Counted from the stretch's first letter, positions 3,149-64,000 are shown. The stretch: DNA of 64,000 nt from Lepidodermella squamata (GCA_047495785.1 JBLDXI010000074.1:1426001-1490000); one strand, 5' to 3'. Notes: generated by a model from the letters alone, not told the origin. Numbers and translations are program-made.

Positions 3149-6100
3149 CTTTCAGTAGTTTCTAAACATTTCTAGGCAGCGACGTAGAACTGTCTTTGAA
3201 AACTTTGAGATAGGAATGCCAGCTTTCGCCCGAGTATGCGGGATTTTGGTGAGACATCACGATCGCTTAGCTGACTAAGCGTTTTACTCTGAATTTCACG
3301 CGTTATAGAAGCCCAACCGGCATCTAGCTTCAGCATCCGCTCGCTAGAAGCAACTGATTCCCAGAAAGATGTGGATAACTACGCGCGCCACGCTCAACTA
3401 TGTAGTGTGATCGTGACATTCTCGAGTTTCGCACGTGTCGGAAACGTAATGTGGGAGTTGTTAGCGATGAAATAGTTAACGCAGCAATTAAATAATGCTC
3501 AATCCCCATAATAGCAACTATGCGCGAAGTTATTCGCCAATCGATAACAATCGGTATGGGTATAAATAAAAATAAATTTGACTTGGACAGCAAATTGAGC
3601 ACAAGAAGAACAACCAGTAACACCCATTGGAACTATTAGCTTTAGAGTTCAAAAAATCTAAGCATAATCTTGGTTCATTCTAGGATATTAGATTGCCCTG
3701 AAACGCATTCTCAAAGGCTCGATTCCAAGCTTTGTGGAAACTCGCTCTGGAATTGTTTCGAGTGGTTCAATAATCTTGAAAGTATTGATAGTGTTTTGAT
3801 AGCGATACATCAAAATGCATCGTACACTTAATTTTCCAATGAAGCGTGAATTTCGGACTTTAGCGAGAGCTGAAACAGATCATTGGGCATAATTCAATTT
3901 CTACTAAAATAGAAATGGATAAATGGGGCCTTGTTTAACTGCTACCTACTTGGGATATAGAATAACCTTTTTCACAGCTGCTAATCGCCCTTTTTGAACA
4001 CTGTCTCTGGGTAACGCCCCAGATTTCCATAAATTTGGGCAATTCAATTAACAAATTGCACAAATGAGGGCTATGAATCTATCAAAACAGTGTCTTTTTT
4101 GTGAAGTAGAAAATTCTGGCGAAAACGTAAAGTTTTGACACAAATATCGAAAATCACGGGGTTTATAAGCCGTGATGATCTCGGCGAAAGGTCAAGAAGA
4201 ACAGGCGTGCTTCGTTGAATTTTAAAAGATATAACGCAGAGTGGTAATAACAAACTACGCACGAGTGAAACGATTTTCCGCGAAACACTCAACGCGCGCG
4301 CACGTCAAATTTCTGACGCACTATATCTATACAAGAAAAAATGCTATTAAAATGAAATCCAAAATAAAACCGAAAAGACGACTTGATTTTTGGTCCGAAA
4401 ATCGTAGATTCACGCAAGCACTATCTTTTGTCATCAAAAATGCGGTTGAATGGCTATATCGAAACTAGCGAAGAACTTATAGCCCGTGGAAAAGACAAAA
4501 ATTGACTCGGTGCTGAATGTGTCCTTAGAAATAGGGATAGTTAGGGACACTGCTGGGCCGTGTAAAAGCCGGACTTGGGCCTACTGTGTCGTGTGAAATG
4601 TGAGACTGATGCTCGCCATCGAGCGGGCAGACATTGTTGACAGTGAGCGATGTAGCGAGAAAAGCGCATAGCTGGTGCGTTAATCAAATTTAGGCGAAAC
4701 GCACCGAGCAGCAGCAGCAGCAGCATCGCCGACAGGTATCACCTTTCGATCGATGGCAAGCAATAATTACGCAGCGAGTAGCAACCGCCGACGACGATTG
4801 AAAAAAAAACACGTGTCTAACTAATCTGGCGAGAGCGCGCAGCCTGGAGATTACTCAGGTGTATCTTCATCATCATCAGCATCATCATCTTTGACAGGCT
4901 GCGAGCGAGCGAGCGAACGAGGGGGTGGGCGAAAAAACTAATGCGTATTCACACGCGCGCGTTCGAATGTGCGCGGTTATTTTCGGACTCGCGCAGCGAA
5001 TTAGGTAAAAGTGGAAAATTGATAATAATGCTATAATGCGGCGATAAGCGCGGTTTTCCGCGGCTTGTAAGCGGTGAATTCGCGGAAAAACTCCGCATGT
5101 ACGCCATTTGTGACACCGAGCGATAACCTAGATAGCAATAATTGCGGTTATTTACAATGTTACCAAGTAAATGGTCAACAAATAGTTAAGCCGTCAAATT
5201 ACAAGCCGTTTAATGTCAAAACTGCATGGCTGCTTATCCGCCCAACCTGATGCCTTGACAGGAGATTCTTATCATTTTTTGGCGCGGCAATTGTTATTCG
5301 GAGGTTCTCTTGCCTGAGGCAGCACCAATCTTGTCGAAAAATAATCGCGGATTTCTGGTATAATCGAAAGACCACAGACGTGGCTCGGTAAAGTTTCAGC
5401 ACTTAGTCTCGAGCAAGATTTCAAGATTTCAGGGTGCACGGTCTTGAAGAGATTAAAACTGTTCGGAATATTTTTTACCGGAAACAAATCTACGGTGAGC
5501 GGAACCTAATTTGCTGTAGCGAAACCAAGTTTACATTTTGCTAAACCAAACTCGAATATGCCAAGATTCCTGTTTTGAATAATTCTACGAATTTTAGGCG
5601 AAGCATGAGTTCTGAATTGAATTGCGTCTTATAGAGAATAACACGCTGAATTTACTGGTGATTTTTGTAGAATAATTGTGCTCAATCTTGGCCCGCGAAA
5701 AATATGCAAAAGGTTATTTCAGGCTATCAGACCCGAAACTATTTTTACAGCTATTTTATGATAGTTGAAGGCAAGGAAAAGGCTTTGTTCTTTCTTATAC
5801 GTTTTCCATAAGTAAGAGATAAGACTAGTCATTGTACATTTTTCAACGTGGCTTTGAGCCATCAAGATTCAAAATAGCCACCAATAATCGACTAACATGA
5901 AATGGTTACTGTGATATTATGTATAATATCGCTTTCTCGACATTCGAAGAAGTGAGTCACAAGTGACGAAGAAGCTATATGGATGCAATGGCACCGTGAA
6001 AATAGTATCTAGCAACTCGGCCCAGCCCACTTTTCCGGTAAAGATATGAATGCCGGGAGAAAAATTATCTCCGTAACGCGGTATTTTTTCTTGGTATATA

Positions 6101-48200: not shown

Positions 48201-51200
48201 AGTTGTTATTAAAATTCGATTACATAGTTGGAAAGCCGAAAGGAAGTGATGAGCTGGCTTCAGAACATTCATTTATAGAAGAGCCGCATGTGACGATGGG
48301 CCCAGTCGTGTATCTTCCACAAACGCTTCCCCAGCGTCTCCCTCCGCCCCCATCAGGAAATTCTCAACTGACCAGCCCAGACTCAACCAGCCATATATAT
48401 CACCCGCCCGGTTCAAGAAATGTGACGGTAGCGAAACCCGGGAAACTTCACGGCCGTAGCTTCATCAGCGATGCGACGACGTCCGAGGTGTCTACTAAGC
48501 GCTCCACAAAGCCGTCAAGGCGCGGCGTCAGCGACAAGTACGATTCGGATGACGAGTCAATAGAGAGCGAGGGCCATTTTTCAAAATCGACCACCAAGCA
48601 GAGCACGATACAGACGAAGAAATCGACTGTCAGCAAATCTGTCGTGCGGCGCAGTGAAGCGTGGAATGAGATGGCAGACTCCGAGGATGACGGCGATGTG
48701 GAGGAGGATGAGTTGCTCAAGTCGCAGGCAACTTCAAAGAAGACGGAAAAACCGACCCCTGCGCCATCTACCGTGTCTACACAGCCGGCAAAGTCTTCCG
48801 TGGTTTCTCAGCCGACCCCTGTTCGAGCTGTGGCGCCACCTCGACCAGCTGCAGCTCCGATCCCGGCAGGAGCAGCTCCCAGACCCGTTGCACCCGGAAC
48901 CCAGGTGGGTCCCAGACCGGTTGCGCCAGTAGCTGTTCAGCCAAGACCAGCAGCCCCGGCACCCGCACCCGCACCCGCACCCACACCCGCCCCAGCTCCA
49001 GCCCCAGCTCCGGCGCCTCAGCCAAGACCGCCTGCTCCATCTGTGCAGCCGGCCCATGCACCCCAGCCAGGTATAATTTGTCACCACTTTCGGTTTTGAT
49101 ACTTGGGGCAATTGAATAATTTGGTGAGCTAATATTTCCGATTCATATCTCAAGCAACGGCTCAAAAACCCAGCGAGCCCAAGCCAGTTGTTCCCGTGGT
49201 GCAACCACCTAAACCCAAGGGTATTTATTCGAAATACTCTAGAAGGAATTTTCTTATATCGTGAACTCTTTCCTCATTAATTAATTAATTCGAACCTATC
49301 AATTTCTGCCTTCTCATTCTCTTGTACGGTTAAATTCCTTACCCAAACACATTATCATTTATTCTTCTGTCTTCTGGCGCCAATACAATTTCAACTTCCA
49401 AGCGTTTTCGCAATCTTAACATAGCTCACCAACCTTCGTACGGTTGGCTTGATTCAGTTATATGATCAAACGAGATGTCGCTTTTAGAGCCAGAACCTAC
49501 CCCGAGGCCTGCTGCGCCAGAACAGACTAAGCCAGCAGCACCAGTGAAAGCACCGCCTTCTCAACGAGAAAATCCGCCTAAATCGCCTCCTCCAGCAGCT
49601 TTACCACCCAGTAACATAAAATCAATCGGTAATTTGATCCAGACCACCTATCCTTTGATACTATCGTCTTATTTCACTCCTCTCTATTTCGATTATGCAA
49701 ACAATAAGTCTCTGATTCAACTTTATTGCTGTGAATTGTTTTTACTTACAGCTCAAGCCCCAGCGCCTAAACCAGGTTGTTGCTTCTTTCTATGCTGTGG
49801 TGGCGAACTGCCCATTTACTATTAAGATGTTAAGCGTTTTAGCGAATTTTATTTACTTCGAATTAACCATCCGCTGATGGATTGCTGCCTTGTGACTTGA
49901 AAATAACCTAGTATTACCTAAAACCTCCGTTACCTCGAAATTAAATGTGGTGAACCTACTTAATTGCGCTCATAGCTCCGGAATCAATCGCAATTGATGT
50001 CGAGCGTGAACTCTGGCCTGCTACAGCTAAAGCCATTGAGCGAAGACCGGAAACCCCGAAAATTAAGCCATTGCCTCCTCGAGAAAAGACTGCCGAGAAA
50101 ACAAAAGAGCGCGCAATACAGGCAGGGGCAAAACCAGTTGAAGAGGCGAAGAAGCCAGAGGTGAACCCACGAATCTCAGCCGAGAAAACGAACGATGAGC
50201 CTTTTAAGTCCGTAAACACTTCGTATCTGAAACCATCAAATCACATCGAGAAGACTAGAGAGCCACAACCTATTCTTGCTAGAGATAAGACGAGAACACT
50301 TGAGCCAAAGCAAGAGCAGAAATCAAATCCTTCGTCAGATGAATCTTTTCAAGTGCAAAAAGCAACCGGTATTTTCTAAAGAGCGTGCGCTGAATCCTTC
50401 GCGTGCAATTCGATAATCTGCAACTGCTTAAAAATCATTTTGCTGTCTTCGATATCTCTGATATATCAGATTCTTTTGAATCAAAAAACACTTTGCTTAC
50501 AATTCAATTTGATGGCTATCTTTTAATTTTTCAATCCCCAATTTTCGGATCTTATCAATGAGTCTGAGGAATTTTATTTGTCTTCTTCCTGTTGAACTAG
50601 TAACCAGTGTCCAGCTCTTAATCGTTCTTACTTGCTCACTTTCAGCCCCAGCTCCGCCAGCGCAGCCAGTTCAAGCACCGAAACCAGGTAAATCTCAGAT
50701 CAAGAAAACAAACGTCGTGTTTTTGCCCACGGAGTGCCAGTTTGTTGATATTGTCTGTCATTGTCTTTTTACCTTTGTCTTGTTTGAGTTGATTATTCAT
50801 ATATTTCTTATAAAATGTTGCAAACTTTCGATTATTTGTGTTACTTTTCCCTCAGCTCCTGCGCCAGTTCCGGCTCCAGTTCCGGCCCCTTCTACGCAGG
50901 CCCCTAAACCGGCTCCAACACCTCAGCCTGCCCCAACACCTGCTCCAGCTGCGAAACCTATGCCGGCCCCAGCGCCCCAGCCTGCCCCTCAACCGAAACC
51001 GCAACCTGCTCCGGTCGCAGCAACTCCGGCACCGGCACCAGCACCGGCCCCAAAACCACTACCGCCTGCCCAGCCGACGCCACCGATCGCGGCACCACCG
51101 CAAGCTCAACCTGCAAAGCCCGCTGAGCAAAAGCAGGCGGAGAAGCCAAAGGAACCCGAAAAGCCGAAAGAACCGGAGAAACCGAAGGAACCTGAAAAAC

Positions 51201-52681
51201 CAAAGGAACCAGAAAAACCGAAAGAACCAGAAAAACCGAAAGAACCAGAAAAACCGAAGGAACCTGCGAAACCGAAGGAGCCTGAGAAGCCAAAGGAACC
51301 CGAAAAACCTAAAGAGCCTGAAAAACCTGAGAAGCCGAAAGATCATCCGCCACCACCGGCGAAGGAACCTACGAAACCTCCTGCCGAAGCGAAGCCAAAA
51401 GATGCAGAACCACCGAAACCACTTGAGCAAAAACCAGTTGAGAAGCCAAAAGAACCCGAGAAACCGAAGGACCCACCGCCTCCTCCTGCAAAGGAACCGA
51501 CCAAGGCCCCGGAACCGAAAAAGGAAGAGCAGCCTAAACAAGATCTCAAACCAGCACCAGCGCCTGCTCAGAAGCCTCCCGAGCCCCCTAAGGAGCAGGA
51601 AAAACCCACAAACGCAACAGTTATCCCCGCCAAAGTCTTCAATCCAAAGTCTGACGCCGAGCTGCTCAATAAAGCAATGAAGGGCGGCGGTACAGATGAA
51701 GAAGCGTTGATCACAGTGCTAACAAAGCGCAGTTACCCCCAAAGGGTCGAGATTGCGAAGAATTACAAAGATATCTACAAAAAGGAACTGGTCGCCGAGC
51801 TAGAAGAGGAGACAGATGGTAACTTTTTCAACGTTCTGTCTAGCTTGCTGCGGAGTCCAGCTGAGTTAGGTGCTTACAACTTGAAAAACTCTCTGGAGAA
51901 TGACGGGGACGACGAGGATGGTCTTGTTGAGTTTATTTGCACGTCAAACCATGAAAATCTCCAGCAAATAAAGGCTAAATACCAAGAAAGTGAGTTTAAG
52001 CATAATTTTGTAACATTCCTGAATTACCGTACTGTAAATATAGTGTTCAGCATCGCTCTGGAGAAAGACCTTGCCAAAACCGGTGGCAACGCAGTAATTC
52101 GCAAACTTATGATCGCAATGCTTGCCCGACCAAAGGCGCCCGAAAAAGTAGACGAAGCAGCGGCGCGGGCTGATGCTGCTAAATTGGATGTCGAATTGAA
52201 AACAAAAGATGGCGAGAAAAGTGTGGCAGCTTTCAGTGACCTGCTGTCAACTCGCTCTAGGTCACAGCTGCGAGCCATCTTCAACTACTACGAAGAGGCA
52301 CAGAAGAAGTCCTTGGAGCAGGCGTTGACCGAAGAGTACAAGGGCGACGCTCTGAAAGCTTTTCTAGCAGTCGGTATGCCGCTTTATTGGAATTATTTAG
52401 TCACGTTTAATTATGGAATCTTTTTTGATCTAGTGACCGCAATTCGAACGCCGACCATGTACTTCGCTCAGCGCTTGAACGCAGCTATGAATGGGTTCGG
52501 GCCGAAAAACCCTGCCCTCATCCGAATAATTGTCTCTCGTTGCGAGTTCGACCTCGGTCTAGTCAAGGCTGACTATGAGAAAATCTACAAGAAGGCCCTG
52601 CAGAAGGACATCGAGGAGGAAACGTTCGGCGACTACGAAACTGCTTTGACATCGCTCATCAACGGCAATCTGAAACAATAA
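45291..52681 (+). CDS. Gene A: RP1-like DCX-PLAT-PLAT-beta-trefoil protein fused via a Pro/Lys/Glu spacer to one annexin core (~1885 aa). Exons 45291..46700, 46755..46937, 46993..47125, 47188..47196, 47307..47508, 47571..47702, 47752..47823, 47876..48171, 48228..49070, 49155..49220, 49488..49628, 49752..49775, 49976..50368, 50646..50687, 50856..51989, 52044..52373, 52434..52681
   Basis: DCX: AYFYREGDQRF...SLVKDLNERISLRNGVRSIF..PEGRHRITSLDEI..GHYICS. PLAT x2: WTVRVATG...DWYCENV...FPFVCKNWF and YEVTVHTGDVWNAAT...GWYLDSIAV...FPAWRWL. Trefoil motif FESIIFPGHFL. Annexin: DAELLNKAMKGGGTDE...RIIVSRCEFDL...GDYETAL. All junctions are GT-AG and in frame (5658 nt). Individual spacer exons are less certain than the domains. 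Confidence 0.82.
47188..47196 (+). other. 9-nt microexon of gene A (ATCACACGA)
   Basis: ttttcttgcgatcag|ATCACACGA|gtaagt. Inclusion makes the alignment to gene B gap-free (ARGETPERL-DHTS-IF versus ARAEPVDKK-EGFA-VF). Confidence 0.75.
51140..51340 (+). repeat. Coding 18-nt tandem repeat, (EKPKEP)x10 plus partial units
   Basis: Peptide units nearly identical while third codon positions vary between units. Confidence 0.95.
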
Positions 52682-53049: not shown

Positions 53050-56000
53050 ATGAAAATGCGAGGACGAGGTGGAAATTACGACGCTTCAGTTATGGATGAT
53101 GACGATGAGGAAGAAGATCAGGACGACGACTATCTGTACAAATACATGCAGAAGCCGCAGCAGAACCAGCAGTTGCGAAAACTGCCTTTTGCGGCTGTAC
53201 AAGCCTCAGAGCAATACGGCGGGAAAGTTGCCCACTTCCATGCTGAGGGAAACACGGGCAACACGCCTGCGCAGAAGGTTATCATTTCGAAACTCCGATA
53301 TCCCACCCTGGATTTGCTGATGGACGATCTGAATCGACGAATTCATTTGTCGCGTGGTGTTCGAGCGATTTACACGCCAAAAGGTCGGCATGCTATCGAA
53401 GATTTGGCTGATATCGAACACGGTGGGCACTACATTGTTTCGTCGTCGGTGTTTCGCGGCGTTGAGACGGATGTTGCGAAGGGAGCATCAGGTCCTAAGC
53501 CGTGGCTGGTCAATCGGCATCACATGGACAGGTACAAGCCAGAGGATGCGACGTATTACAACGCACTAAATAACGGCCAACTTCGCAAGAGATCGCGTAA
53601 TGACTCGGCATCAGAACGCAGGCGCAGTGTAAGATTTTCGCGGCTCCATTATTAATCATTTGACAGCAAAACTCCTATTTCATTCCATAATTTCTTGCAC
53701 GGAATGAGGAAAGCGGGAGAAATTATAAGCTGATGTTATTTTTGCCATCAGACCTCTACTTTTTCATTTAAAGATTCAAATCGTTCAGCTTAATTTGTTC
53801 CCTTCTATTTTTTCAGAGATCCAATGAGCGTGAATTGACTCGGTTGCCTGATATCTCACCGCGAACTAACGGCCCTGTTCGCGGCAAGAAAGAGAACAAA
53901 CTGAGCCGGATAACCCCTTCTCGCCGATATTTCTCAGACGATGACACTGACCGCCGGCCTTACGGCCTACGTCAGTCCTACCCAGATTCGGCTCGAAAGA
54001 AAACTATTCTCCCGAAAATTGGAGGGGCTCCGAAGAAAGCGTGGGAAGAGCCGAAATCACCGCCGCCAGCTCGCGGGTTGAAACGGCTTGAACACGAGCC
54101 TTGGAACGAACCGCCAGCTCGAAAGAACCCCAGGAAAAAAGGGGTGAACCCTGAGGCTTCAGCGTATTGGCCAACTGGGGTCGGCTATCGTGGTGACGAT
54201 TATGTGATGCCTCCAGCTGTTTTCCAACAGCAGCAAAAACAAGAAGCTCTGTCGCAGAACAACGGTCAAAATAATGCTGCTGCTTCACGGCGAGGCAAAA
54301 TGTTGGACTACGGCCGAAATGCCATGTCTCGCCATTTAGTCTACACCATCCGTCTGATGAGTGGTGAAATGCCAAGTGGTGCATCTACCTCTAACGTTAT
54401 GATAACGCTGTACGGCGCCCATGGCTCTTCGCCTACCTTCACATTTGAACCCAAGAGAAAGGCTTTCTTATCCGGGACGACCGAAGTATACGCCGGAGTG
54501 CGTCTGCCCCAGGATATTGGAGACATTTACAAGCTGAGGATAGAAATAACAAATACAGGCTTGAATCCAGATTGGCTGTGTGATGAAATCCAAGTGGAAG
54601 ACGAATCAACGCGCGAAATCCTCAGCTTTCCCTGCAGAAGGTGAGATTAGGGATTAAAATGTCAATATACATATATGAACAATCGCGTTTTTCAAGATGG
54701 CTCTCTTCAACACTCGGTGATCGGCACATTGTTCGAGAAATTCCTGCACTTGGTCAAGACAGGCCACCAGTTGCTCGTAAGTTACCTCATGCTTCCATTG
54801 AGCTATTCCTTCAGACAAGGACCTGTTTCCTCGTTTAGTCGTTCACTACGAATTAACCGTCCAAACCGGTAATCTTTACAACGCTGGCACGGCTGGTAAA
54901 GTTACTATTACATTGTTTGGTGAGCGAGGCGATTCGGGGGCTCGGCTGTTAAAAATTCCAATCTCCAATAACCGATCACCCTTTTCAAAGGGCGCTAGCG
55001 AGGTTTTCATGATAGAGAGCGTATCTCTCGGGGAACTGCGGCGTCTTAGAGTACAGCATGAACCTGAATCTCAGCAAGCTGGCTGGTATTTAGATCACAT
55101 AATTGTCCGAGAAAAGGTAACTTGATAGAATGCTATAGAATATAGCAAACAATGTCATAATAGGATTTGCATGCAACCTTTGTATTTCCCGCCCAACGGT
55201 GGCTGAATACCCGCGATGAGGATCGGCAGCTAGCGGTCGACCTCAAAGCCAGTGATTTTCCGAATTACGCTCGTTTTCTTGACAAAAAGCTAGTAAGTTG
55301 ATTTTTCACGGCATCTTCGAAGGTTCATCACGATGTTTAGTGGCCAACCGAGCGATGGAAGTTCAAATTGGTTGGTGCCGAGCTGGTGCTCTACTCGATG
55401 ATGTCAAATAAGGCTCTCCGCGTCACTGGAGGAGGCTTCATTGACGCAAGAGCTGAGCCTGTTGACAAGAAAGAAGGCTTTGCTGTATTTTTGTCGCAAG
55501 AGCCCAGTGAACACGATAACGAGTCGATTGTAGCACTGAGGACAGCATCGAAACTACCAAGTTTTGTGGCCTTCAGTGGCAGTCAGAAGATTGTCTCAAA
55601 GAACACGTATTCCGGATCTTGCGACCTTCGGATTCACGCGTTATCCTCAGGAGCTATAACAGTCGAATCAGATAAGTATCCGGGAAATTTCATCTCGGTA
55701 GCATCGAATGGCCAGATGTATCCTGAAGCGCAAGCGTTGGCCCAACCAGGACCTAATCAGTCGTTTTTTGCCTACGTGAAAGGAGCTTTTCGAGACACCG
55801 GTATCGTCATGCTGTGCACATCCAAGAATCAAACGATGTGTATCGATCGAGATCCGAGTTCGGTTTCCGGCATTGGAGGCCGAAACAAGTTGGCTCATTT
55901 TCGCGTTCACAAGGTCGCGATTGGCAATATTCGAATGTTTGAATCTGTTGTCTTCCCTGGCAGCTATTTGCAAATAAAAAAGGGAGCATGCAATTGCTTA

Positions 56001-59000
56001 GGAAATGGCGACAAATTCTGTAAGCTCAAAGATAATAAATAGTAAAAGCTGAATGTATTTATTTATTTATTTGATTTAAGGTGAATTCCGAGTCAGAAGA
56101 TTCCGAGAGCAGAACTTCGTGACGCTCGAGAGCATTCGTGATAGGGGCTTTTTGACCTTTGCCCCAAATGGCCAGATTCAAGTTCTCGAGCATCAACCAG
56201 CAACAGGGGCTCCATCTTCCAGGCTATACCCTGAAGTCGTATCATGTGCGTTTGTCCGAGCTCGAAAGTGTTTATCGATTGATCTATTCTTTTACTTCAA
56301 ACAGTTGGTCGGAGAAAAGAAGGCAGCAAGCCACCATCTGAAATCACTGAAATTAAGAAGAAAATCGACGATCCTGATTCCGACCTCAATTCCGAGGTTG
56401 ATGACCTGTATCGGGATCGATATCGCGGGAAACCGAAACCAGCGCGAAAATCCAACGATCCTCCGCCTGTGCGGAAAGTAAAGAAAGAAGAGCGGGCCCC
56501 ATCGCCTGGTCGGAGGGCTCCACCGAAAGGGCTGAGGCCGACCTTGACACCGGCTGCCCCATTCCACGCCAAGGACGATGCTCAGCTCATTCGCAAGATC
56601 ATCTCTCGCAACGAGTTCGATCCAATCCTGAAAATTGTCTGCCGTCGAACAGCCGACCAGCGAACTGCCGTTGCCAAGACCTATAAAGACCTATTCAAGA
56701 AGGAAGTTGTTCAAGATATCGAGACTGTTTCCCAGGGTGAGCTCAGCGAGTTAGTGTCGGATCTTTTCCTGCCATATATTACCTTCGTGGCGGAGGATGT
56801 GCACAAGGCCCTTCAAGGTAACGTGGACGAAATAGCTATGATCGAAATGCTGTGCTCGAATACAGATGAGGAGCTCACTCAAATCAAGCAAGAGTATCAA
56901 AAACGTGAGCTCTTTAAAATCACAATTAGTCTTGAAATAAGTAAACTTCCAATTCTGTTTAAGGATTCGGTCAAGCCCTGGATTCAAGTATCATGCGATC
57001 GATGACAAGCGGCTTTGCTCAACGACTTTTCGTTAGATTGCTGTCAAGACCATCATCCCATGACTCAGTCGTGAAAGCAGCCATGGAAAATGACGCAAAG
57101 ATGTTGAATCAAGAATTCGGAGAACGCGTCGATCGTCCCGAGGACCATTTTCTGTTCACGTTGCTGGCTGGTCGCAGCCACACCGAGCTGCGAACAATAT
57201 GCGATAGCTACGTCCAACTTTACAAGACGGAGGTCGATCAAGAATGTTTGAAGAAAATCCCTGGCGAGAACGGGAAGTACTACGCCACTGCCATCTCTTG
57301 CATAACCAAGACTCAGAGCTATTTTGCACAGCGGTTGAACGAAATTCTTACAACCGGCCCCATAGATGCGCTAGATCGCGTCATCTTATCTCGCTGTGAA
57401 GTTGATACGGAGAATATCAAAGCAGAATACGAGAGGCTGTTCAACGCGTCACTGACAAAGAAAATGGCGGCGAAGATCAAAGGCAGTCATCTGACAGCAA
57501 TGTTGACTTTGCTGAAAGAACCGGTGCCAGATTCGGGCGAACAGTCGCCACCCTCGACAAGGCGAGATCCCAAAAACCCAGTTAAACCCAAATCAAATGA
57601 TCAGAGCAGCGAATTGGCCCCAACTGTTTTTCCAGAGAAGAATTTCATCGCAAAACAGGATTGTGAAGTCATACAAAAAGCTTTGAAGTCGAAAAATCCA
57701 GAAGAAATAGCTGCTATTCTGACCTCGATTCTAACTCGAAGGTCTTGGCAGCAACGGCAGGATATCGGCAGAGTTTACAAAGATGCGAACAAGCATGACT
57801 TGGAAGGAGATATCGAAGCTGCGGTCGAGGGATTTTTCTGTAAGTTGATGGTGCGGCTCCTGAAGACGCCGGCTGAAGCTATGGCTCGCGACCTTAACGC
57901 TGCGATCAAAGCGAGTGATGAAAGCTGCATCATGGAAATAATCTGCACTGCCTCGCACAATGACCTCCAAGCAATCAAAGACAAGTATCAAAAGCGTAAG
58001 TCCCATATTATTTATTCCTAACGCTTCTTTTTATATGATTTATGATTTGTACACTAATATTTCAATTTTCAATTTTCATAAAGTTTTCAGCAAGCCATTA
58101 CACAAAGACATTGAGGAAGAGAGTGGAGCTTTCCGAAAGTTCATGGTCGGTCTTCTTGGCCGCTCCAAGGCACCCAGTGACTCCACTATTAACCAAGACA
58201 TGTTCGATGCTGATGCTAAAATGCTGCATGACGAGATCAAGAACAACGGCACTGACAACCTTATTAAATTTTTCACTTCGAACCGCGGGCCAAGCCAACT
58301 CAGCTCAATCTACTTGACCTACAAACAGGAGTTCAAAGCTGAGGTCGAAGAGGATTTGAAGAAGCACATGAACAGCGACGTCGGAAATGCATTTCGAACG
58401 TGCGTTGAGTCTAGCAAGAACAAAACTGTCTACTTTGCGAAACGACTGAGAGCTTACTTGGATGGCAAGGGCAACCAGAACGCCGGCGTTGGTCGCCTCG
58501 TTGCCTCTAGGTGCGAGGTTGATCTCGCAAATATCAAAGCCGAGTACCACAAATTGACCGGCAAAAGCTTGACCCTGAGCGTCGCCAGCCTCGTCACGCC
58601 GAAGGACTACAGTCAAGCTGTTGTTTCTTTGATTGAGGGTAACAAATCAGGGAGTGGACAACTGGCTGGGCCCGCGCCGCCTCCTTATACGCCTACTGTA
58701 TTTGCTGAGCCGAAATTCAACGTAAAGCAGGACTGTGACGCGCTTCAGAAAGCTGTGAAAGGCGCAGTAACGGAACCTTTCATCACCATTCTTACTAGAC
58801 GGTCTTGGCAACAACGTGCTGAAATTGAAAAGACCTACAAGGATGCTAATAAGCGTGAGTTGGAAAAGGATCTGGAGGGCGAGACAAGCGGGAACTTCTT
58901 GAAGGTTTTGTTGAAACTTCTGAAAAAACCTTACGAAAGTTCGGCTCGGGATTTGAATGTGGCCATTAAGACGAACGACACAGATTGCTTGATCGAGATC

Positions 59001-62000
59001 ATTTGCGCAAGCTCCCACTCCGACCTTCAGTCGATAAAAGAGACCTATAAAGAGCGTAAGCTGAGTTCAAAACTTTCAGCCACCATAACTTATTTCTTTA
59101 CAGTATTCGGCTCAAGTCTTCAAGAAGATGTCGAATCTCTGAGCGACTCGAAGCTTGAAGAGCTGTTAATCGCTTTGATCAATCGCCCAAAATCACCTGA
59201 AACCGTCGATGCATCAAACGCGAAAAACGAAGCTCGGGATATGCATGATGAGATAACAGCCGGTGGGAAAAAGGGCGTTAAGCATGTCAACGAACTGATC
59301 TCCACAAGAGGCCAAGCCCAGCTGAGAGCAGCATTTGATGCCTATCAGAAGGAGTACAGTGTCGACATTGCCGATGACTTCAGGAAGTATTTCGATGGCG
59401 ATATTGAGGGAGCCTACGTTACAGTTGGTAAGTTTTATTCGGCCATGTGTATTATTAATAGAACACTGAAATCCTGCGTTTAAGTCGATGCGATCCGGAG
59501 CAAACCCAGATACTACGCGAAACGATTAAACAGTGCACTTACGGCTAACAGTGGCACTCACCACGGGTCTCTAATTCGGCAAATCGTAGCCCGCTGCGAG
59601 ATTGATTTGGCCAATGTCAAGTATGAATATGAACAGCTATACGGTAAATCTCTTCTGAAGGATGTTGAGTCAAAAACGTCGGGCGATTACCGGAGTGCCC
59701 TGGTTTCTTTAATAAATGGCAACAAAGCTGTCGAAGCTCCTCCTCCCCCGCCTTCTAAGCCCAAACCAGCAGAACCAAAGCGCCCTGAACCGAAGCCTTC
59801 AACTAAGGAGCCCGTTGTCAAAGAGGCGAAAGAATCCAACGTGAAAGCTCCTCCACAGTCGAAAATGAAATTCATCCCCACAGTAGTCGCTGAGCCGAAG
59901 TTCGATGTCAAAAAAGATTGCGAAGTCCTTATGAAGGCAATGAAAGGAATCGGGACCGATGAAGATGCTCTAACATCAATTCTCACCAAGCGATCATCGA
60001 AGCAGCGTCAGGATATTAAGAAGAATTACAAAGAAATTTACGATAGGGTTAGTTTATTTATATATCAACTTAGTATCGAACGATTATTAATGATGCCATG
60101 AAATTGTAAAGGAACTGAAACAGGTAAAATCAGCTCTATCTCTGCCTGTGATTTTCTGAGAGATCTAACATTTCATCTATTTAAGCAGGCTATCGCTTGC
60201 AATATTCTGTATTTATTTTTGAAATATTATGATCTTGTTCTCGCAGGACTTGGCTAAGGAAATCGATTCGGAAAACAACGGCAACTACCTGAAAGTCCTC
60301 ATGGCCCTCTTGTCGACCCCAGCGGGCTACTTGGCTGAATGCCTCAATGCTGCAATGAAAGGAGCTGGAACAGACGAGGACACTCTCATCGACATAATCT
60401 GCACTTCTTCAAACGCAGACCTTCAACTAGTCAAGGAAGCCTATTTGTCCAGTAAGTTTCCTATGACTCTCAGTTTAATGATTATTGAATGGCTGAAATA
60501 TTCTTGGCAGAATTCAAGGCCAAGCTGGAGGATGACATCGTGAGCGATACATCTGGGTCTTTCCAAAATCTGTTGGTTTCCCTGCTAAACCGGCCGAAAT
60601 CGCCGGAGAAAGTTGATCCGAAAACAGCTAAAGGCGATGCCAAAATGCTGCATGATGAAATAATGAAAGGCGGAAGCAAGGCTGAAGTGCAACTCAACAC
60701 CCTGTTCGCAACACGAGGTAAGGCATCAAATTGCATACGTGCTTCCTGATACTCACCCTTTTCATAGGCCAAGCTCAGCTAAGAATGGCGTTTGACTTCT
60801 ACAAAGAAGATTTCAAGTCAGATATCGAGGATGATATCAAGAAACACTTTGATGGCGACATTGAAGCTGCCTACGTCGCTGTCGGTGTGTTTGGTAGCTT
60901 GTTTAGTATATTTATATTAATTGTCCTGACTATCAATTAGTTGGTGCCATCCGTAACAAGCCGCTGTACTTGGCGAGGCAAGTGGACAAATCCATGTCAG
61001 GCGCAGGGACGAGAGACGATGACTTGATCCGCCTGGTCGTTTCCACGTGTGAAATCAACCTCGGCAACATCAAGACCGAGTATGAAAAGCTGAAAAAGCA
61101 ACCCTTGGTTAAGTCTGTTGAAAGCGAAACGAATGGAGACTACCAGAAGGCCTTGGTTTCGTTAATAAATGGAAATTTTGATGCGAAAGCTCCAGCAAAA
61201 GAAGAAAAGCCGAAAGAGGAACCAAAGACGCAAAAGAAAGCCGCTGAACCTGGTAAAACTTTTTCAATCACGATCGTTTCATTTTGTAATGACTCAAATT
61301 TGGGAAATGAATAGCTAAAACAGGAAAAGGTGCTACTACTGCTAAGGCAGGGAAAACAAACGAAAAAGCGGCGGTTTCAAAAAAAGGTGACCCCGAAACC
61401 CGGTGTTAATTTGTGTGTTTTAGAGTAGACGAAAATTAGCTGAAAATTAGCTGCCCATTGTTTTTGGCATGATGAGTTTTTATTATATCTTGAAAGACAA
61501 TTAATCTCGCCTAACCCAATCGCTTCTTTGCTTTCTATTAGAAACCGAGGCGAAAAACATTGCCTCTATTCCAACGGTGGTTGCCGAGCCGAAATTTGAT
61601 GCGAAAAAAGACGCCGAAGTACTGATGAAGGCGATGAAAGGCATCGGCACAGACGAGAAGAGCATCATCGCCGTGCTAACCCGTCGAAACTACGCTCAAC
61701 GGGCCGAAATTGAAAAAGCCTACAAAGCTGAATACAAAAAGGTGAGATGATCAATTTTCGGAATGTGAGATGCTGTTCAAATTCGATTTATTAAGGATCT
61801 TGTTTACGTAAGTTAATGGGTTTTGTAAATCGCCGTCGTATCTGTATCGTATCGTAGCATTATGATGTTTTTTTCATATCTATCATCTATCTGTCGTCTA
61901 TGAAGTCTATTCTATCAATCTGTCTAAATGACCATAATTTTCGAATTTTGATAAATTTCTTCCAGGAATTGAGGTCTGAGTTGGAGAGCGAAAATAGTGG

Positions 62001-64000
62001 TAAGTTCCAGGACACCTTGGATGCGCTCATGACGGCGCCTCTCGAGTTCGCGGCTCAGAGTCTGAAAAAAGCAATTGAGGGAGCTGGAACAGATGAAGAG
62101 GCAATCATTGAGGTGCTATGCTATGCTAATTACGACGACCTTCAACTAATCAAAGCCAAGTACGAAAAGCGTAAGTTGGAGTGGCCGTCGCACATTCATT
62201 TGCATTATTTTTGTTCCTAGTTTACAAGGTTTCACTGCAGAAGGATATCGAGTCGGATACAAGTGGCCATTTTCGAAAACTTCTAGTTGCTCTACTCAAT
62301 CGGCCTAAATCTCCAGAGAATGTTGACGTGAAAGGGGCGAAAACTGATTCGAAAACCCTACATGATGCATTTGCGAAGGGCAGTGATAAAGCTGCCGACG
62401 AGTTGATCAAACTGCTGTCAGGCCGAGGGCGCTCGCAGCTACGGCTCATATTCGACACTTACAAAGCTGATTACAACACTGATGTTGTGGATGACATAAA
62501 GAAAAACTTCGATAGCGACATCGAATCAGCGTTCGTCGCAACTGTCTATTCGATCCGCAACCGTTTCAAGTATTTCGCGAGCCGGTTGAATGCAGCGATG
62601 GCAGGGCTTGGGACTCGAGACCAAGCTCTCATTCGGCTTATTGTCTCGCGCTGCGAAATCGATCTCGGAAATGTGAAGGAAGAGTACGAGAAAATGTACA
62701 AAAAGTCTCTTGTAGCAGCCGTCTCAAGTGAAACTACGGGCGATTACTGCGACTGCTTGGTTTCGCTCATTAACGGTAACGGAAGCGGGAGCCCGCTGCC
62801 AAAAGCTCCTGAACCGAAACCAGTTGAGAAGAAGGCAGAAAAGAAAGAGCCAGAGAAGAAGGAACCAGAGAAGAAAGAACCAGAGAAGCCCGAAAAAGGT
62901 ATTAAAATATAAATGATGCGTATCCATATATAGTCGTATAATGAATCGCTGGGTAATTTTTGAACAGGAAAGAAAGGTAATATCAGCTTTTGCTTTCATC
63001 CAAATTTTTTAAATAGCCGGTTTATTTTATCAAGTAGAGTAGTCTGTAGCCCAATTAAATTCAAATAGCAATGCTCACGCAATTACGATACTATATATTA
63101 TATATTTCTTCAGCAATTGAGGCCTCCTGCGTCGCATCTGTACCGACTGTGGTTGCTGAGCCGAAGTTCGATGCGAAAAAAGATGCTGAGGTGTTGATGA
63201 AGGCCATGAAAGGCATTGGCACGGACGAGAAAAGCATCATCTCGGTTCTCACTCGCCGAACCTATCCGCAAAGAGCTGAGATCGAGAAGAAGTTCAAGGC
63301 GGAATACAAAAAGGTAACTTTAACATTTTTCACTCGCCATGATTACGATATTTAATGGCCTGGCAACATTTTACGAACTTAGAATTTCCTTGAAGTGAGT
63401 CTTGGTGTTGTGTATTTTGACCCCGATTCCTGATTCCCATTGCTCGTGTCATTGCTGTGAGAATCTATTTTAAAATGACGATTCGTTTCAGGAACTTCTT
63501 GCAGATCTAAAGAGTGAAACTGGAGGCGATTTCTTCAATCTTCTCACAGCCCTACTTACTCCACCTATCGAGTTCGCAGCGAAAAGTTTAAAGAAAGCGA
63601 TTCAAGGCGCTGGAACCGATGAGGAAACTCTAATCGAGGTGATCTGCTACGCATCATACGACGATCTTCAACTCATCAAGAGTAAATACGAGATGCGTGA
63701 GTTGAAGTTCTACTATATATTACCCCTTCATAATTCCCCCACTATTCGCAGTTTATCGAGTTCCGTTGCAACAAGATGCCGAAAGTGATACTAGTGGTCA
63801 TTTCCGGAAGTTGCTCGTAGCCTTGCTGAATCGGCCTAAATCGCCTGAGAATATTGATGTCAAAGCCGCGAGATCTGATGCGAAAAGCCTTCATGCCAGT
63901 ATAGCTAAAGGTGGCTCAGCAGCTGCCGATGACCTGACAACGGCTCTGTCGATAAAAGGCCGATCTCAGCTGAGGTTGATCTTCGAGAATTACAAGGCTG
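53050..64000 (+). CDS. Gene B: RP1-like DCX-PLAT-PLAT-beta-trefoil protein fused to at least 6 tandem annexin cores, 3'-partial. Exons 53050..53628, 53817..54640, 54697..54776, 54839..55116, 55164..55292, 55341..56019, 56081..56245, 56305..56904, 56964..57995, 58084..59055, 59104..59427, 59485..60047, 60247..60451, 60511..60717, 60768..60884, 60941..61252, 61315..61386, 61542..61741, 61966..62170, 62221..62898, 63114..63313, 63492..63696, 63752..>64000
   Basis: DCX: YPTLDLLMDDLNRRIHLSRGVRAIYTPKGRHAIEDLADIEHGGHYIVS. PLAT x2: YTIRLMSG...DWLCDEI...FPCRRWL and YELTVQTGNLYNAGT...GWYLDHIIV...FPAQRWL. Trefoil motifs VESDKYPGNFI, FESVVFPGSYL, LESIRDRGFL. Annexin cores start near 56540, 57620, 58690, 59875, 61570 and 63140, each opening with a PTL/PTV..F..K.D motif. 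Introns are mostly 47-90 nt GT-AG and preserve frame. Confidence 0.88.
60112..60123 (+). other. Candidate 12-nt microexon (ELKQ), annexin core 4
   Basis: ttgtaaag|GAACTGAAACAG|gtaaaa inside the 199-nt phase-0 intron 60048..60246. Confidence 0.6.
61796..61807 (+). other. Candidate 12-nt microexon (DLVY), annexin core 5
   Basis: tttattaag|GATCTTGTTTAC|gtaagt inside the homologous intron 61742..61965. Confidence 0.65.
62968..62976 (+). other. Candidate 9-nt microexon (adds GKK) in the linker between cores 5 and 6
   Basis: tttttgaacag|GAAAGAAAG|gtaata inside phase-1 intron 62899..63113. Confidence 0.5.
63383..63394 (+). other. Candidate 12-nt microexon (NFLE), annexin core 6
   Basis: ttttacgaacttag|AATTTCCTTGAA|gtgagt inside the homologous intron 63314..63491. 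Confidence 0.65.

What the first reader, a model, noticed from the sequence alone, without database searches (positions are those of the whole stretch)
56540..63700. Polarised loss of Ca2+-binding loops along the annexin array
Seen, AB-loop sequences of repeats I/II/IV: core 1 IISRNEF / LQGNVDE / LTTGPID; core 2 LKSKNPEE / IKASDE / LDGKGNQN; core 3 VKGAVTE / IKTNDTD / LTANSGTHH; core 4 MKGIGTDE / MKGAGTDE / MSGAGTRD; core 5 MKGIGTDE / IEGAGTDE / MAGLGTRD; core 6 MKGIGTDE / IQGAGTDE. Structural motifs (RR..QR, SRCExD) persist in cores 1-3. Established: type II Ca2+ sites need the GxGT loop plus a downstream acidic cap. Inference: proximal cores act as Ca2+-insensitive spacers or interaction modules and distal cores as membrane grips. 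The proximal cores may fill the spacer role that the Pro-rich linker plays in gene A.
Basis: partly seen in the sequence, partly recalled or inferred. Interest (0 to 1): 0.75.

Follow-up and report, generated by a model that had tools for sequence, protein, structure and literature searches.

The report
Calcium-dead proximal cores in poly-annexin
One large invertebrate gene strings at least six annexin units behind a microtubule-binding-type head; the three units nearest the head have lost every standard calcium-binding site but are still kept by selection, the outer units keep theirs, and a related organism has the same layout, so it looks like a maintained design whose function is untested.

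Summary
On the + strand, a GT-AG spliced gene runs DCX, two PLAT domains, a beta-trefoil and a linker into at least six four-repeat annexin cores, and leaves the window at 64000.

- **Site pattern:** Cores 1-3 have no canonical type II Ca2+ site (GxGT loop plus acidic cap 40 residues on) in 12 repeats. Cores 4-6 have one in every repeat I, II and IV seen (8 of 8). Repeat III is non-canonical in all cores.
- **Not decay:** A metagenome contig (L001) carries the positional orthologue, with the same dead cores 1 and 2. Its core 3 still has a canonical repeat I, so the window's lineage lost that site later.
- **Selection:** Near-identical haplotypes of the orthologue give dN/dS of about 0.13 for cores 1-3 and about 0.02 for cores 4-5.
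- **Fold:** The orthologue's core 2 folds as a confident annexin disc (pLDDT 94, TM 0.9 to annexin A2/A4).

The reading "Ca2+-blind proximal modules, Ca2+-competent distal grips" is plausible. The spacer role is inference.

The scan noted a sister gene elsewhere in this genome with three all-dead cores (s1-422729). I score this as a new variant of a known kind, with moderate interest.

The parts
53050..53655 (+). DCX (doublecortin) domain exon of the same gene's head
   Evidence: Pfam PF03607, 57.6 bits
54340..55122 (+). two PLAT/LH2 domains of the head
   Evidence: Pfam PF01477, 46.6 and 43.6 bits
55341..56245 (+). beta-trefoil-like domain (weak FGF match). Its last exon joins the linker through a phase-1 intron at 56246-56304.
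   Evidence: Pfam FGF 19.5 bits, below cut-off. Splice junction found. The same junction (..F|G..) is in orthologue L001.
56245..56564 (+). basic/Pro-rich linker from head to core 1 (87 aa)
56565..57520 (+). annexin core 1. Four repeats, no canonical type II site (loops ISRNEFD / LQGNVDE / LTTGPID; caps V, M, K). The most diverged core. One intron at 56905-56963.
   Evidence: Orthologue o1 pairs with it at 100/100 support.
57641..58643 (+). annexin core 2. No canonical type II site (LKSKNPEE / IKASDE / LDGKGNQN). Intron at 57996-58083.
   Evidence: Orthologue o2 pairs at 100/99. The fold of o2 is an annexin disc.
58713..59732 (+). annexin core 3. No complete type II site (VKGAVTE with cap Glu kept / IKTNDTD / LTANSGTHH with cap Lys). 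Introns at 59056-59103 and 59428-59484.
   Evidence: In orthologue o3, repeat I is still canonical.
59485..60047 (+). single exon holding core 3 repeat IV, the 55-aa P/K/E linker and core 4 repeat I. This is the dead-to-live junction in one open frame.
   Evidence: The same continuity is in L001 at 3684-4273.
59898..61182 (+). annexin core 4. Canonical sites in repeats I, II and IV (MKGIGTDE / MKGAGTDE / MSGAGTRD; caps E, D, E). Four introns.
61592..62786 (+). annexin core 5. Canonical sites in repeats I, II and IV (MKGIGTDE / IEGAGTDE / MAGLGTRD; caps E, D, E).
63164..63999 (+). annexin core 6, cut by the window end inside repeat III. Canonical sites in repeats I and II. It is an old duplicate of core 5 (74.6% identity, dS saturated).
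51650..52678 (+). gene A's single annexin core, used as the comparison. Repeat I is canonical, II and III are lost, IV is GFGP with the cap kept. It sits behind a long Pro-rich linker (about 50558-51650).

Best explanation
Gene B encodes one long protein: a DCX-PLAT-PLAT-trefoil head followed by a chain of annexin discs joined by 23-55 residue Pro/Lys/Glu linkers.

All the discs descend from one ancestral canonical annexin core. They share intron positions and form one clade.

The three head-proximal discs lost their AB-loop Ca2+ ligands and acidic caps before the split from the L001 organism. They are kept as folded, selected, Ca2+-blind modules. The distal discs (4, 5, 6 and more beyond the window) keep three standard type II sites each and still duplicate in a lineage-specific way.

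The most likely working model, which is inferred, has two parts. The distal discs provide multivalent Ca2+-dependent attachment to acidic membranes. The proximal trio is a structured, Ca2+-insensitive connector or docking stretch between the cytoskeleton-type head and the membrane-binding end.

Shown here:
- the site pattern;
- its conservation in an orthologue;
- purifying selection on the dead cores;
- an intact predicted fold.

Inferred: the loss of Ca2+/lipid binding itself, and the spacer or docking role.
For: **Gene model**
- Open frames and GT-AG junctions link the trefoil, the linker and six cores.
- Core 3 repeat IV and core 4 repeat I share one exon in the window and in L001.

**Family and site mapping**
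- Pfam Annexin matches all pieces.
- Alignment to solved annexin A6 fixes the loop and cap columns.

**Site table**
- Cores 1-3 have 0 of 12 canonical sites; cores 4-6 have 8 of 8 in repeats I, II and IV.
- Ligand columns are lost beyond background divergence, p = 9e-4.

**Orthologue**
- The best library hit, P0001, and its contig L001 hold trefoil-linker-o1..o6 with the pattern ---- / ---- / C--- / CC-C / CC-C / C-.
- The tree pairs c1+o1 at 100/100, c2+o2 at 100/99 and c3+o3 at 89/83. c5+c6 is a window-lineage duplication.

**Selection**
- Between species dS is saturated. dN is 0.52-0.59 for the dead cores against 0.42-0.44 for the live ones.
- Between haplotypes about 99% identical, omega is 0.13 for o1-o3 (12 amino-acid changes in 35 differences, p = 4e-7 against neutrality) and 0.02 for o4-o5.
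- AB loops are 65% identical between orthologues in live cores and 25-42% in dead ones.

**Fold**
- AlphaFold2 model of o2: pLDDT 94.1, pTM 0.91.
- Foldseek TM 0.90-0.94 to annexin A2/A4 crystal structures.

**Literature**
- The type II site is the AB loop plus an Asp/Glu about 40 residues on. AB sites are needed for membrane attachment. Annexin A9, with all sites lost, does not bind PS liposomes at sub-millimolar Ca2+ (PMC3588008).

**A parallel**
- CFAP97-headed annexins of Haliotis and Mytilus also have a fully dead first core followed by canonical cores, in a separate clade.
Against: - The model rests on frames, GT-AG sites and conservation in L001.
- The gene leaves the window at 64000, so only six cores were read. 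In the orthologue the sixth core has a dead repeat II, so the pattern is not strictly monotonic further out.
- Sequence cannot exclude weak type III sites or Ca2+-independent lipid binding by cores 1-3.
- At core level the ordering alone has a 1 in 20 chance.
- The omega difference between dead and live cores is not significant on the few haplotype differences (p = 0.075).
- Among 24 other multi-core annexins retrieved there is no general first-versus-last polarity: 6 last greater, 9 first greater, 9 equal.
- The fold was predicted for the orthologue's core 2, not for a window core, because the window cores are split by introns.
Confidence: 0.6

Rival explanations
1. Relaxed redundancy with an age gradient. 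The array grows by duplication at its distal end. With many canonical discs present, Ca2+ sites in the oldest proximal discs became dispensable and drifted away. The discs are kept folded only because an unfolded stretch in the middle of the protein would be harmful. No specific spacer or docking role exists.
For: - Divergence is graded: terminal branches are c1 2.0, c2 0.85, c3 0.44, c4 0.38, c5/c6 0.17.
- c5/c6 is a lineage-specific duplicate.
- Core 3 repeat I was lost only in the window lineage.
- Dead-core loops are less conserved than the rest of the core.
- Omega is higher in the dead cores.
Against: - The three dead cores are kept as strict 1:1 orthologues at 39-45% identity while dS is saturated.
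- Omega of 0.13 is strong constraint for mere filler.
- Several dead-loop strings and their indels are conserved between species: LKSKN, (I/V)K(A/S)SDE, GNQ, SGT.H.
Confidence: 0.25
2. The proximal cores still bind membranes, but by a non-canonical route: Ca2+-independent basic or hydrophobic contacts, type III sites, or pH-dependent binding as described for some annexins. The whole array would then be a membrane binder with two modes.
For: - Annexin A9 lacks all type II sites yet is reported to associate with membranes by other means, and Ca2+-independent lipid binding exists in the family (PMC3588008).
- Core 2 of the window is mildly basic, pI 8.4.
- Core 2's dead loops are as conserved as the rest of that core.
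Against: - There is no consistent charge trend. Orthologue o2 has pI 6.1, and cores 1 and 3 are acidic.
- Loops of core 1 are poorly conserved, 25%.
- There is only one K/R/HGD motif in the whole array, and it lies in core 4.
Confidence: 0.1
3. Two products. Cores 4 onward are also, or only, made from an internal promoter as a separate canonical poly-annexin. The 'polarity' would then be a join of two functional units and not a feature of one protein.
For: - A Met lies in the core 3 to core 4 linker (..QSKMKFIPTVV..).
- No RNA data could be obtained.
- Introns are richer from core 4 on.
Against: - Core 3 repeat IV, the linker and core 4 repeat I are one uninterrupted exon with no stop, in the window and in L001. 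L001 has no Met there.
- All cores form one clade with shared intron positions.
Confidence: 0.04
4. Cores 1-3 are decaying remnants that evolve neutrally.
For: They have the lowest HMM scores and the most indels.
Against: - About 1000 codons are open with intact splice sites.
- Orthologues are retained.
- Omega is 0.13, p = 4e-7 against neutrality.
- The predicted annexin fold is confident.
Confidence: 0.01

Closest known systems
Annexin A6 (vertebrate eight-repeat annexin; PDB 1m9i, 1avc)
   Same: - More than one four-repeat core in one chain, joined by a linker.
- One of its repeats (repeat III of the C-terminal core) has also lost the type II consensus (PMC3588008).
- It is the best PDB sequence match, by summed score.
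   Different: - A6 has two cores and no foreign head, and seven of its eight repeats are competent. Reviews call eight repeats unique to A6 (PMC10882027).
- Here there are at least six cores behind a DCX-PLAT-trefoil head, and three whole cores are dead.
- The cores arose by duplication within this gene family, not from A6.
Annexin A9 and A10 (vertebrate annexins without type II sites)
   Same: - Whole-core loss of the GxGT/acidic-cap sites with the fold kept.
- A9 does not bind PS liposomes at sub-millimolar Ca2+ and acts through protein partners (PMC3588008). It is a functional analogue of cores 1-3.
   Different: - A9 and A10 are single-core proteins from separate genes.
- Here the dead cores sit in the same chain as live ones, in a fixed order, and are unrelated to A9/A10 by descent (invertebrate lineage-specific clade).
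Predicted CFAP97 (Hemingway)-annexin proteins of molluscs and Nematostella (XP_046366105.2, XP_071159420.1, XP_048586536.1)
   Same: - A cilia-associated head followed by 2-5 annexin cores.
- In Haliotis and Mytilus the head-proximal core is fully dead and the distal cores are canonical.
- In Nematostella the last core has the most sites.
   Different: - The head is different (Hmw_CFAP97, not DCX-PLAT-trefoil).
- Their cores fall in a separate clade, so the dead first core arose independently.
- These are uncharacterised predictions. I found no paper on them.
Sister gene in this genome: DCX-PLAT-trefoil protein with three annexin cores, all twelve loops lost (scan note s1-422729)
   Same: Same kind of head, and a trio of Ca2+-dead cores.
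   Different: - It is reported to have no canonical distal cores.
- I could not read its sequence, so its relation to cores 1-3 is untested.

Membership tests
Annexin superfamily (Pfam PF00191) | repeats of about 70 residues that match the Annexin profile | tested here: met
   All exon pieces pass the Pfam cut-off. An in-session HMM finds 21 repeats in the window's model, at 19-88 bits. Core 1 repeat III is not detected and core 6 repeat III is cut by the window end.
Annexin superfamily (Pfam PF00191) | four repeats packed into one all-helical disc (4 x 5 helices) | tested here: met
   Tested on the intron-free orthologue of core 2 (P0001:99-400): pLDDT 94.1, 20 helices, TM 0.90-0.94 to annexin A2/A4/A5 crystals. 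No window core was folded, because each is split by introns.
Canonical Ca2+-dependent annexin core | type II site: (K)-G-x-G-T AB loop plus Asp/Glu about 40 residues downstream, in two to four repeats | tested here: met
   Cores 4, 5 and 6 have repeats I, II and IV all canonical, 8 of 8 seen.
Canonical Ca2+-dependent annexin core | the same feature, asked of cores 1-3 | tested here: not met
   0 of 12 repeats. Core 3 repeat I keeps K-G, T and the cap but has Val for the second Gly and a 2-residue deletion.
Canonical Ca2+-dependent annexin core | Ca2+-dependent binding to acidic phospholipid | not testable with these tools
   Needs liposome co-sedimentation or ITC with expressed cores.
Annexin A6 orthology group | two cores derived from the vertebrate A5/A10-like fusion | tested here: not met
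   At least six cores. All window cores form a clade with gene A's core and the L001 cores (SH-aLRT 95). No vertebrate A6 sequence was placed in the tree, so this rests on architecture and on the lineage-specific clade.
Doublecortin-domain (RP1/DCX-like) proteins | DCX domain at the N-terminal side | tested here: met
   PF03607, 57.6 bits at 53050-53655. Only one DCX domain was examined, and microtubule binding is untested.
Single-transcript fusion protein | head, dead cores and live cores on one mRNA | tested here: inconclusive
   Frames, GT-AG junctions and the shared exon at 59485-60047 support it, and L001 conserves them.

The most novel reading that the evidence does not exclude
Ca2+-dead annexin discs are a selected building block, a rigid and Ca2+-insensitive ruler or docking platform. 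Cytoskeleton- or cilium-anchored proteins would place it between their head and a multivalent Ca2+-dependent annexin membrane grip. The same solution would have been reached independently in the DCX-PLAT-trefoil family seen here and in the CFAP97-annexins of molluscs.
Probability: 0.3. Interest if true: 0.7.

Novelty: new variant of a known kind. Interest (0 to 1): 0.55.

Why it matters
Current reviews describe annexins as four-repeat proteins, with eight repeats unique to annexin A6 (PMC10882027). They treat loss of Ca2+ sites as a repeat-by-repeat or whole-gene matter (annexins A9 and A10).

Here one chain holds both states in a fixed order, conserved across a deep split and under purifying selection. 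That makes it a natural experiment. The same fold, in the same protein, can be compared with and without Ca2+ sites. It also offers a direct test of whether Ca2+-dead annexin discs have a function of their own: spacing, docking or oligomerisation.

The head (DCX, PLAT) and parallel fusions to cilia proteins (CFAP97, DZANK1-like) point to a little-studied class of cytoskeleton-to-membrane tethers in invertebrates.

Tried and rejected
- **Transcript check:** The spliced model is unconfirmed by RNA.
- **Word-index protein search:** the exon holding core 1 repeats III-IV and core 2 repeats I-II gave no hit within its length limits. That justified the one full HMMER search.
- **dN/dS between the window and L001:** dS is saturated in every core pair, so omega cannot be computed and only dN is usable. 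I replaced it with haplotype comparisons L001-L004.
- **Is polarity a general rule of multi-core annexins?** No. Among 24 other retrieved proteins, 6 have more sites in the last core, 9 in the first, and 9 are equal.
- **Charge, pI or K/R/HGD motifs as a hint of a new binding mode in dead cores:** no consistent trend.
- **Literature:** searches on multi-core annexins, DCX/PLAT-annexin and CFAP97-annexin found no description. The library covers open-access papers only.
- **Tree of window cores alone:** too few rows to resolve the order of duplication beyond c5+c6.
- **Joined sequences:** the spliced protein was used only inside local scripts. Searches went exon by exon by reference, and the fold used an intron-free ORF from the library (P0001:99-400).


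Full report
**What is there.** The region is part of a eukaryotic, intron-bearing gene on the + strand. Stop-free frames linked by short GT-AG introns of 47-310 nt give a continuous model:
- DCX domain (53050-53655; Pfam 57.6 bits);
- two PLAT domains;
- a beta-trefoil-like domain with a weak FGF match;
- an 87-residue basic linker;
- annexin cores 1 to 6, joined by linkers of 23-55 residues rich in Pro, Lys and Glu.

The model runs off the window at 64000 inside core 6 repeat III. The trefoil-to-linker junction is a phase-1 intron. Core 3 repeat IV, the next linker and core 4 repeat I lie in one exon (59485-60047), so the dead and live cores are joined in the genome. The joined protein was used only in local scripts. 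Every database search went exon by exon by reference, and the joined sequence was sent to no search or fold tool.

**The observation.** Alignment of two exons to solved annexin A6 fixes which columns are the AB loop and the acidic cap. The definition is in the literature: AB-loop carbonyls plus a bidentate Asp/Glu about 40 residues after the conserved Gly (PMC3588008).

Results by core:
- Cores 1, 2 and 3 have no complete type II site in 12 repeats. The caps are lost as well as the loops, and the loops carry insertions and deletions.
- Core 3 repeat I is the least damaged. It keeps K-G, Thr and the Glu cap, but the second Gly is Val and two residues are deleted.
- Cores 4 and 5 have canonical sites in repeats I, II and IV. 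Core 6 has them in I and II; the rest is outside the window.
- Repeat III is non-canonical in all cores. This is the repeat that most often lacks the motif in invertebrate annexins (PMC3795353).

In whole sites the pattern is a step. In ligand positions kept it is graded (2, 3, 5, 12, 12 of 12, and 8 of 8), as it is in HMM bits and in branch length. Ligand columns are lost more than other columns invariant in cores 4-6 (10/36 against 239/426, p = 9e-4). The repeat-level split has p = 4e-5. The core order alone has a 1 in 20 chance.

**Is it decay?** No.
- *Finding the orthologue.* The word-index search was blank within its length limits. I therefore used the one full HMMER search with the exon that holds core 2 repeats III-IV and core 3 repeats I-II. 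The best hit, P0001 (654 aa, 41% identity), comes from ENA metagenome assemblies.
- *Its layout.* Its contig L001 (7443 nt) carries the same gene layout: a trefoil end highly similar to the window's, the same ..F|G.. splice junction, a linker, and cores o1 to o6.
- *Orthology.* A maximum-likelihood tree pairs c1+o1 (100/100), c2+o2 (100/99) and c3+o3 (89/83). c5+c6 is a duplication in the window's lineage, and c4, o4 and o5 are unresolved.
- *Its site pattern.* It reads ---- / ---- / C--- / CC-C / CC-C / C-. Cores 1 and 2, and repeats II and IV of core 3, were already dead in the common ancestor. Core 3 repeat I was lost later, in the window's lineage only.
- *Shared peculiarities.* Several oddities of the dead loops are shared by the two species: LKSKN; (I/V)K(A/S)SDE with the same 2-residue deletion; GNQ; and the inserted SGT.H with a Lys cap.

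**Selection.**
- Between the two species dS is saturated, so omega cannot be computed. dN is 0.52-0.59 for cores 1-3 and 0.42-0.44 for cores 4-5. The dead cores therefore change about 1.3 times faster but are far from free.
- Four haplotypes of the orthologue (L001-L004, about 99% identical) give an unsaturated estimate. Omega is 0.13 over o1-o3: 954 codons, 35 differences, 12 of them amino-acid changes, p = 4e-7 against a neutral 75% share. Omega is 0.02 over o4-o5: 647 codons, 14 differences, 1 amino-acid change. The contrast between the two is not significant on these counts (p = 0.075).
- AB loops are more conserved than the core average in live cores (65% against 53%). In dead cores they are at or below average: 25% against 44% in core 1, 42% against 42% in core 2, and 38% against 45% in core 3. 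This is the signature expected if the loops lost their ligand role while the fold stayed under constraint.

**Fold.** The window cores are each split by introns, so I folded the orthologue's intron-free core 2 (P0001:99-400) with an alignment of 50 library annexins (A1).
- The model has pLDDT 94.1, pTM 0.91 and twenty helices.
- It superposes on annexin A2, A4, A5 and A11 crystal structures at TM 0.90-0.94 and about 2 Å rmsd.

**Origin.**
- All window cores, gene A's core and the L001 cores form one clade (SH-aLRT 95) within invertebrate annexins.
- Intron positions recur in register between cores: repeat I phase 0, II/III phase 1, III/IV phase 1.
- The array therefore grew by duplication of one intron-bearing canonical core, and the proximal copies lost their sites. 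It is a true loss, not a mosaic of unrelated annexins.
- The distal part still turns over, as c5/c6 shows. The proximal trio is stable.

**Wider context.** The HMMER hits show that multi-core annexins are present, unstudied, in public predictions:
- Nematostella XP_048586536.1 (1969 aa, five cores);
- Haliotis XP_046366105.2;
- Mytilus 'annexin A6-like' XP_071159420.1;
- Priapulus XP_014664979.1;
- Branchiostoma KAI8489325.1;
- a choanoflagellate protein.

Three of them carry an Hmw/CFAP97 cilia-protein head. In Haliotis and Mytilus the head-proximal core is fully dead and the distal cores are canonical. That core lies on a long branch in a clade separate from the window's cores, so it is an independent case of the same layout.

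It is not a general rule, however. Over 24 other multi-core proteins, first-versus-last site counts show no trend.

I found no paper on any of this. A 2024 review still calls eight repeats unique to annexin A6. Loss of type II sites as such is common: about a third of annexin domains, and all of annexin A9.

**Reading.**
- *Shown:* a conserved, selected trio of folded annexin discs without standard Ca2+ sites, placed between a cytoskeleton-type head and a run of standard discs.
- *Inferred:* the trio does not respond to Ca2+ and serves as a structured connector or docking stretch, and the distal discs give multivalent Ca2+-dependent membrane attachment.

Gene A has the same head, a long Pro-rich linker and one core with only repeat I canonical. 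The main rival is plain relaxation through redundancy, with no role beyond staying folded.

**Limits.**
- The array's end is outside the window.
- The organisms of the window and of L001 are not identified.
- The haplotype counts are small.

**Verdict.** It is a new variant of a known kind, of moderate interest.

Noticed in passing
window 61324-61386: An in-frame stretch flanked by AG and GT lies inside the core 4 to core 5 linker intron (61253-61541). It could be a cassette exon that lengthens the linker by 21 residues.
   Followed up: no
window 56905-63751 and L001 980-6549: Intron positions recur in register from core to core: repeat I phase 0, II/III phase 1, III/IV phase 1. Proximal cores have fewer introns, and core o2 of L001 has none.
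   Followed up: partly
window, start of cores 2-6 (e.g. 59880-59910, 61570-61600, 63140-63170): Each core from the second on is preceded by a conserved short motif, (I/T/A)-P-T-V-(V/F)-x-E-(P/K)-(K/N)-F, at the end of its linker. The L001 cores have it too.
   Followed up: no
library proteins P0010, P0057, P0002 (Haliotis XP_046366105.2, Mytilus XP_071159420.1, Nematostella XP_048586536.1): Predicted proteins with a Hemingway/CFAP97 head followed by two to five annexin cores. This is another fusion of a cilia protein to an annexin array, and I found no literature on it.
   Followed up: partly
library protein P0037 (Asterias rubens XP_033629438.1): It is annotated DZANK1-like and carries a complete annexin core at its C-terminus. 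This matches the DZANK1-annexin join noted elsewhere in this genome by the scan (s1-410390).
   Followed up: no
window 58140-58170 (core 2 repeat III): The loop keeps N-G-T-D, reminiscent of the W-G-T-D-E of ordinary annexin repeat III, but the cap position is His. No other core of the array keeps this.
   Followed up: no
window 51650-52678 (gene A core): Gene A's single core has only repeat I canonical. Repeat IV is G-F-G-P with its acidic cap kept, and repeat II is N-D-G-D. Gene A may therefore be a weaker Ca2+ binder than any one of cores 4-6.
   Followed up: partly
L001 7073-7441 (core o6): The orthologue's sixth core has a canonical repeat I but a dead repeat II (IKQKEKGV). Site loss is therefore not confined to the proximal end in that organism.
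   Followed up: partly
library protein P0125 (Branchiostoma belcheri KAI8489325.1, 1205 aa): Seven annexin repeats were detected, none with a canonical type II site. This is a multi-core annexin that appears fully Ca2+-dead.
   Followed up: no
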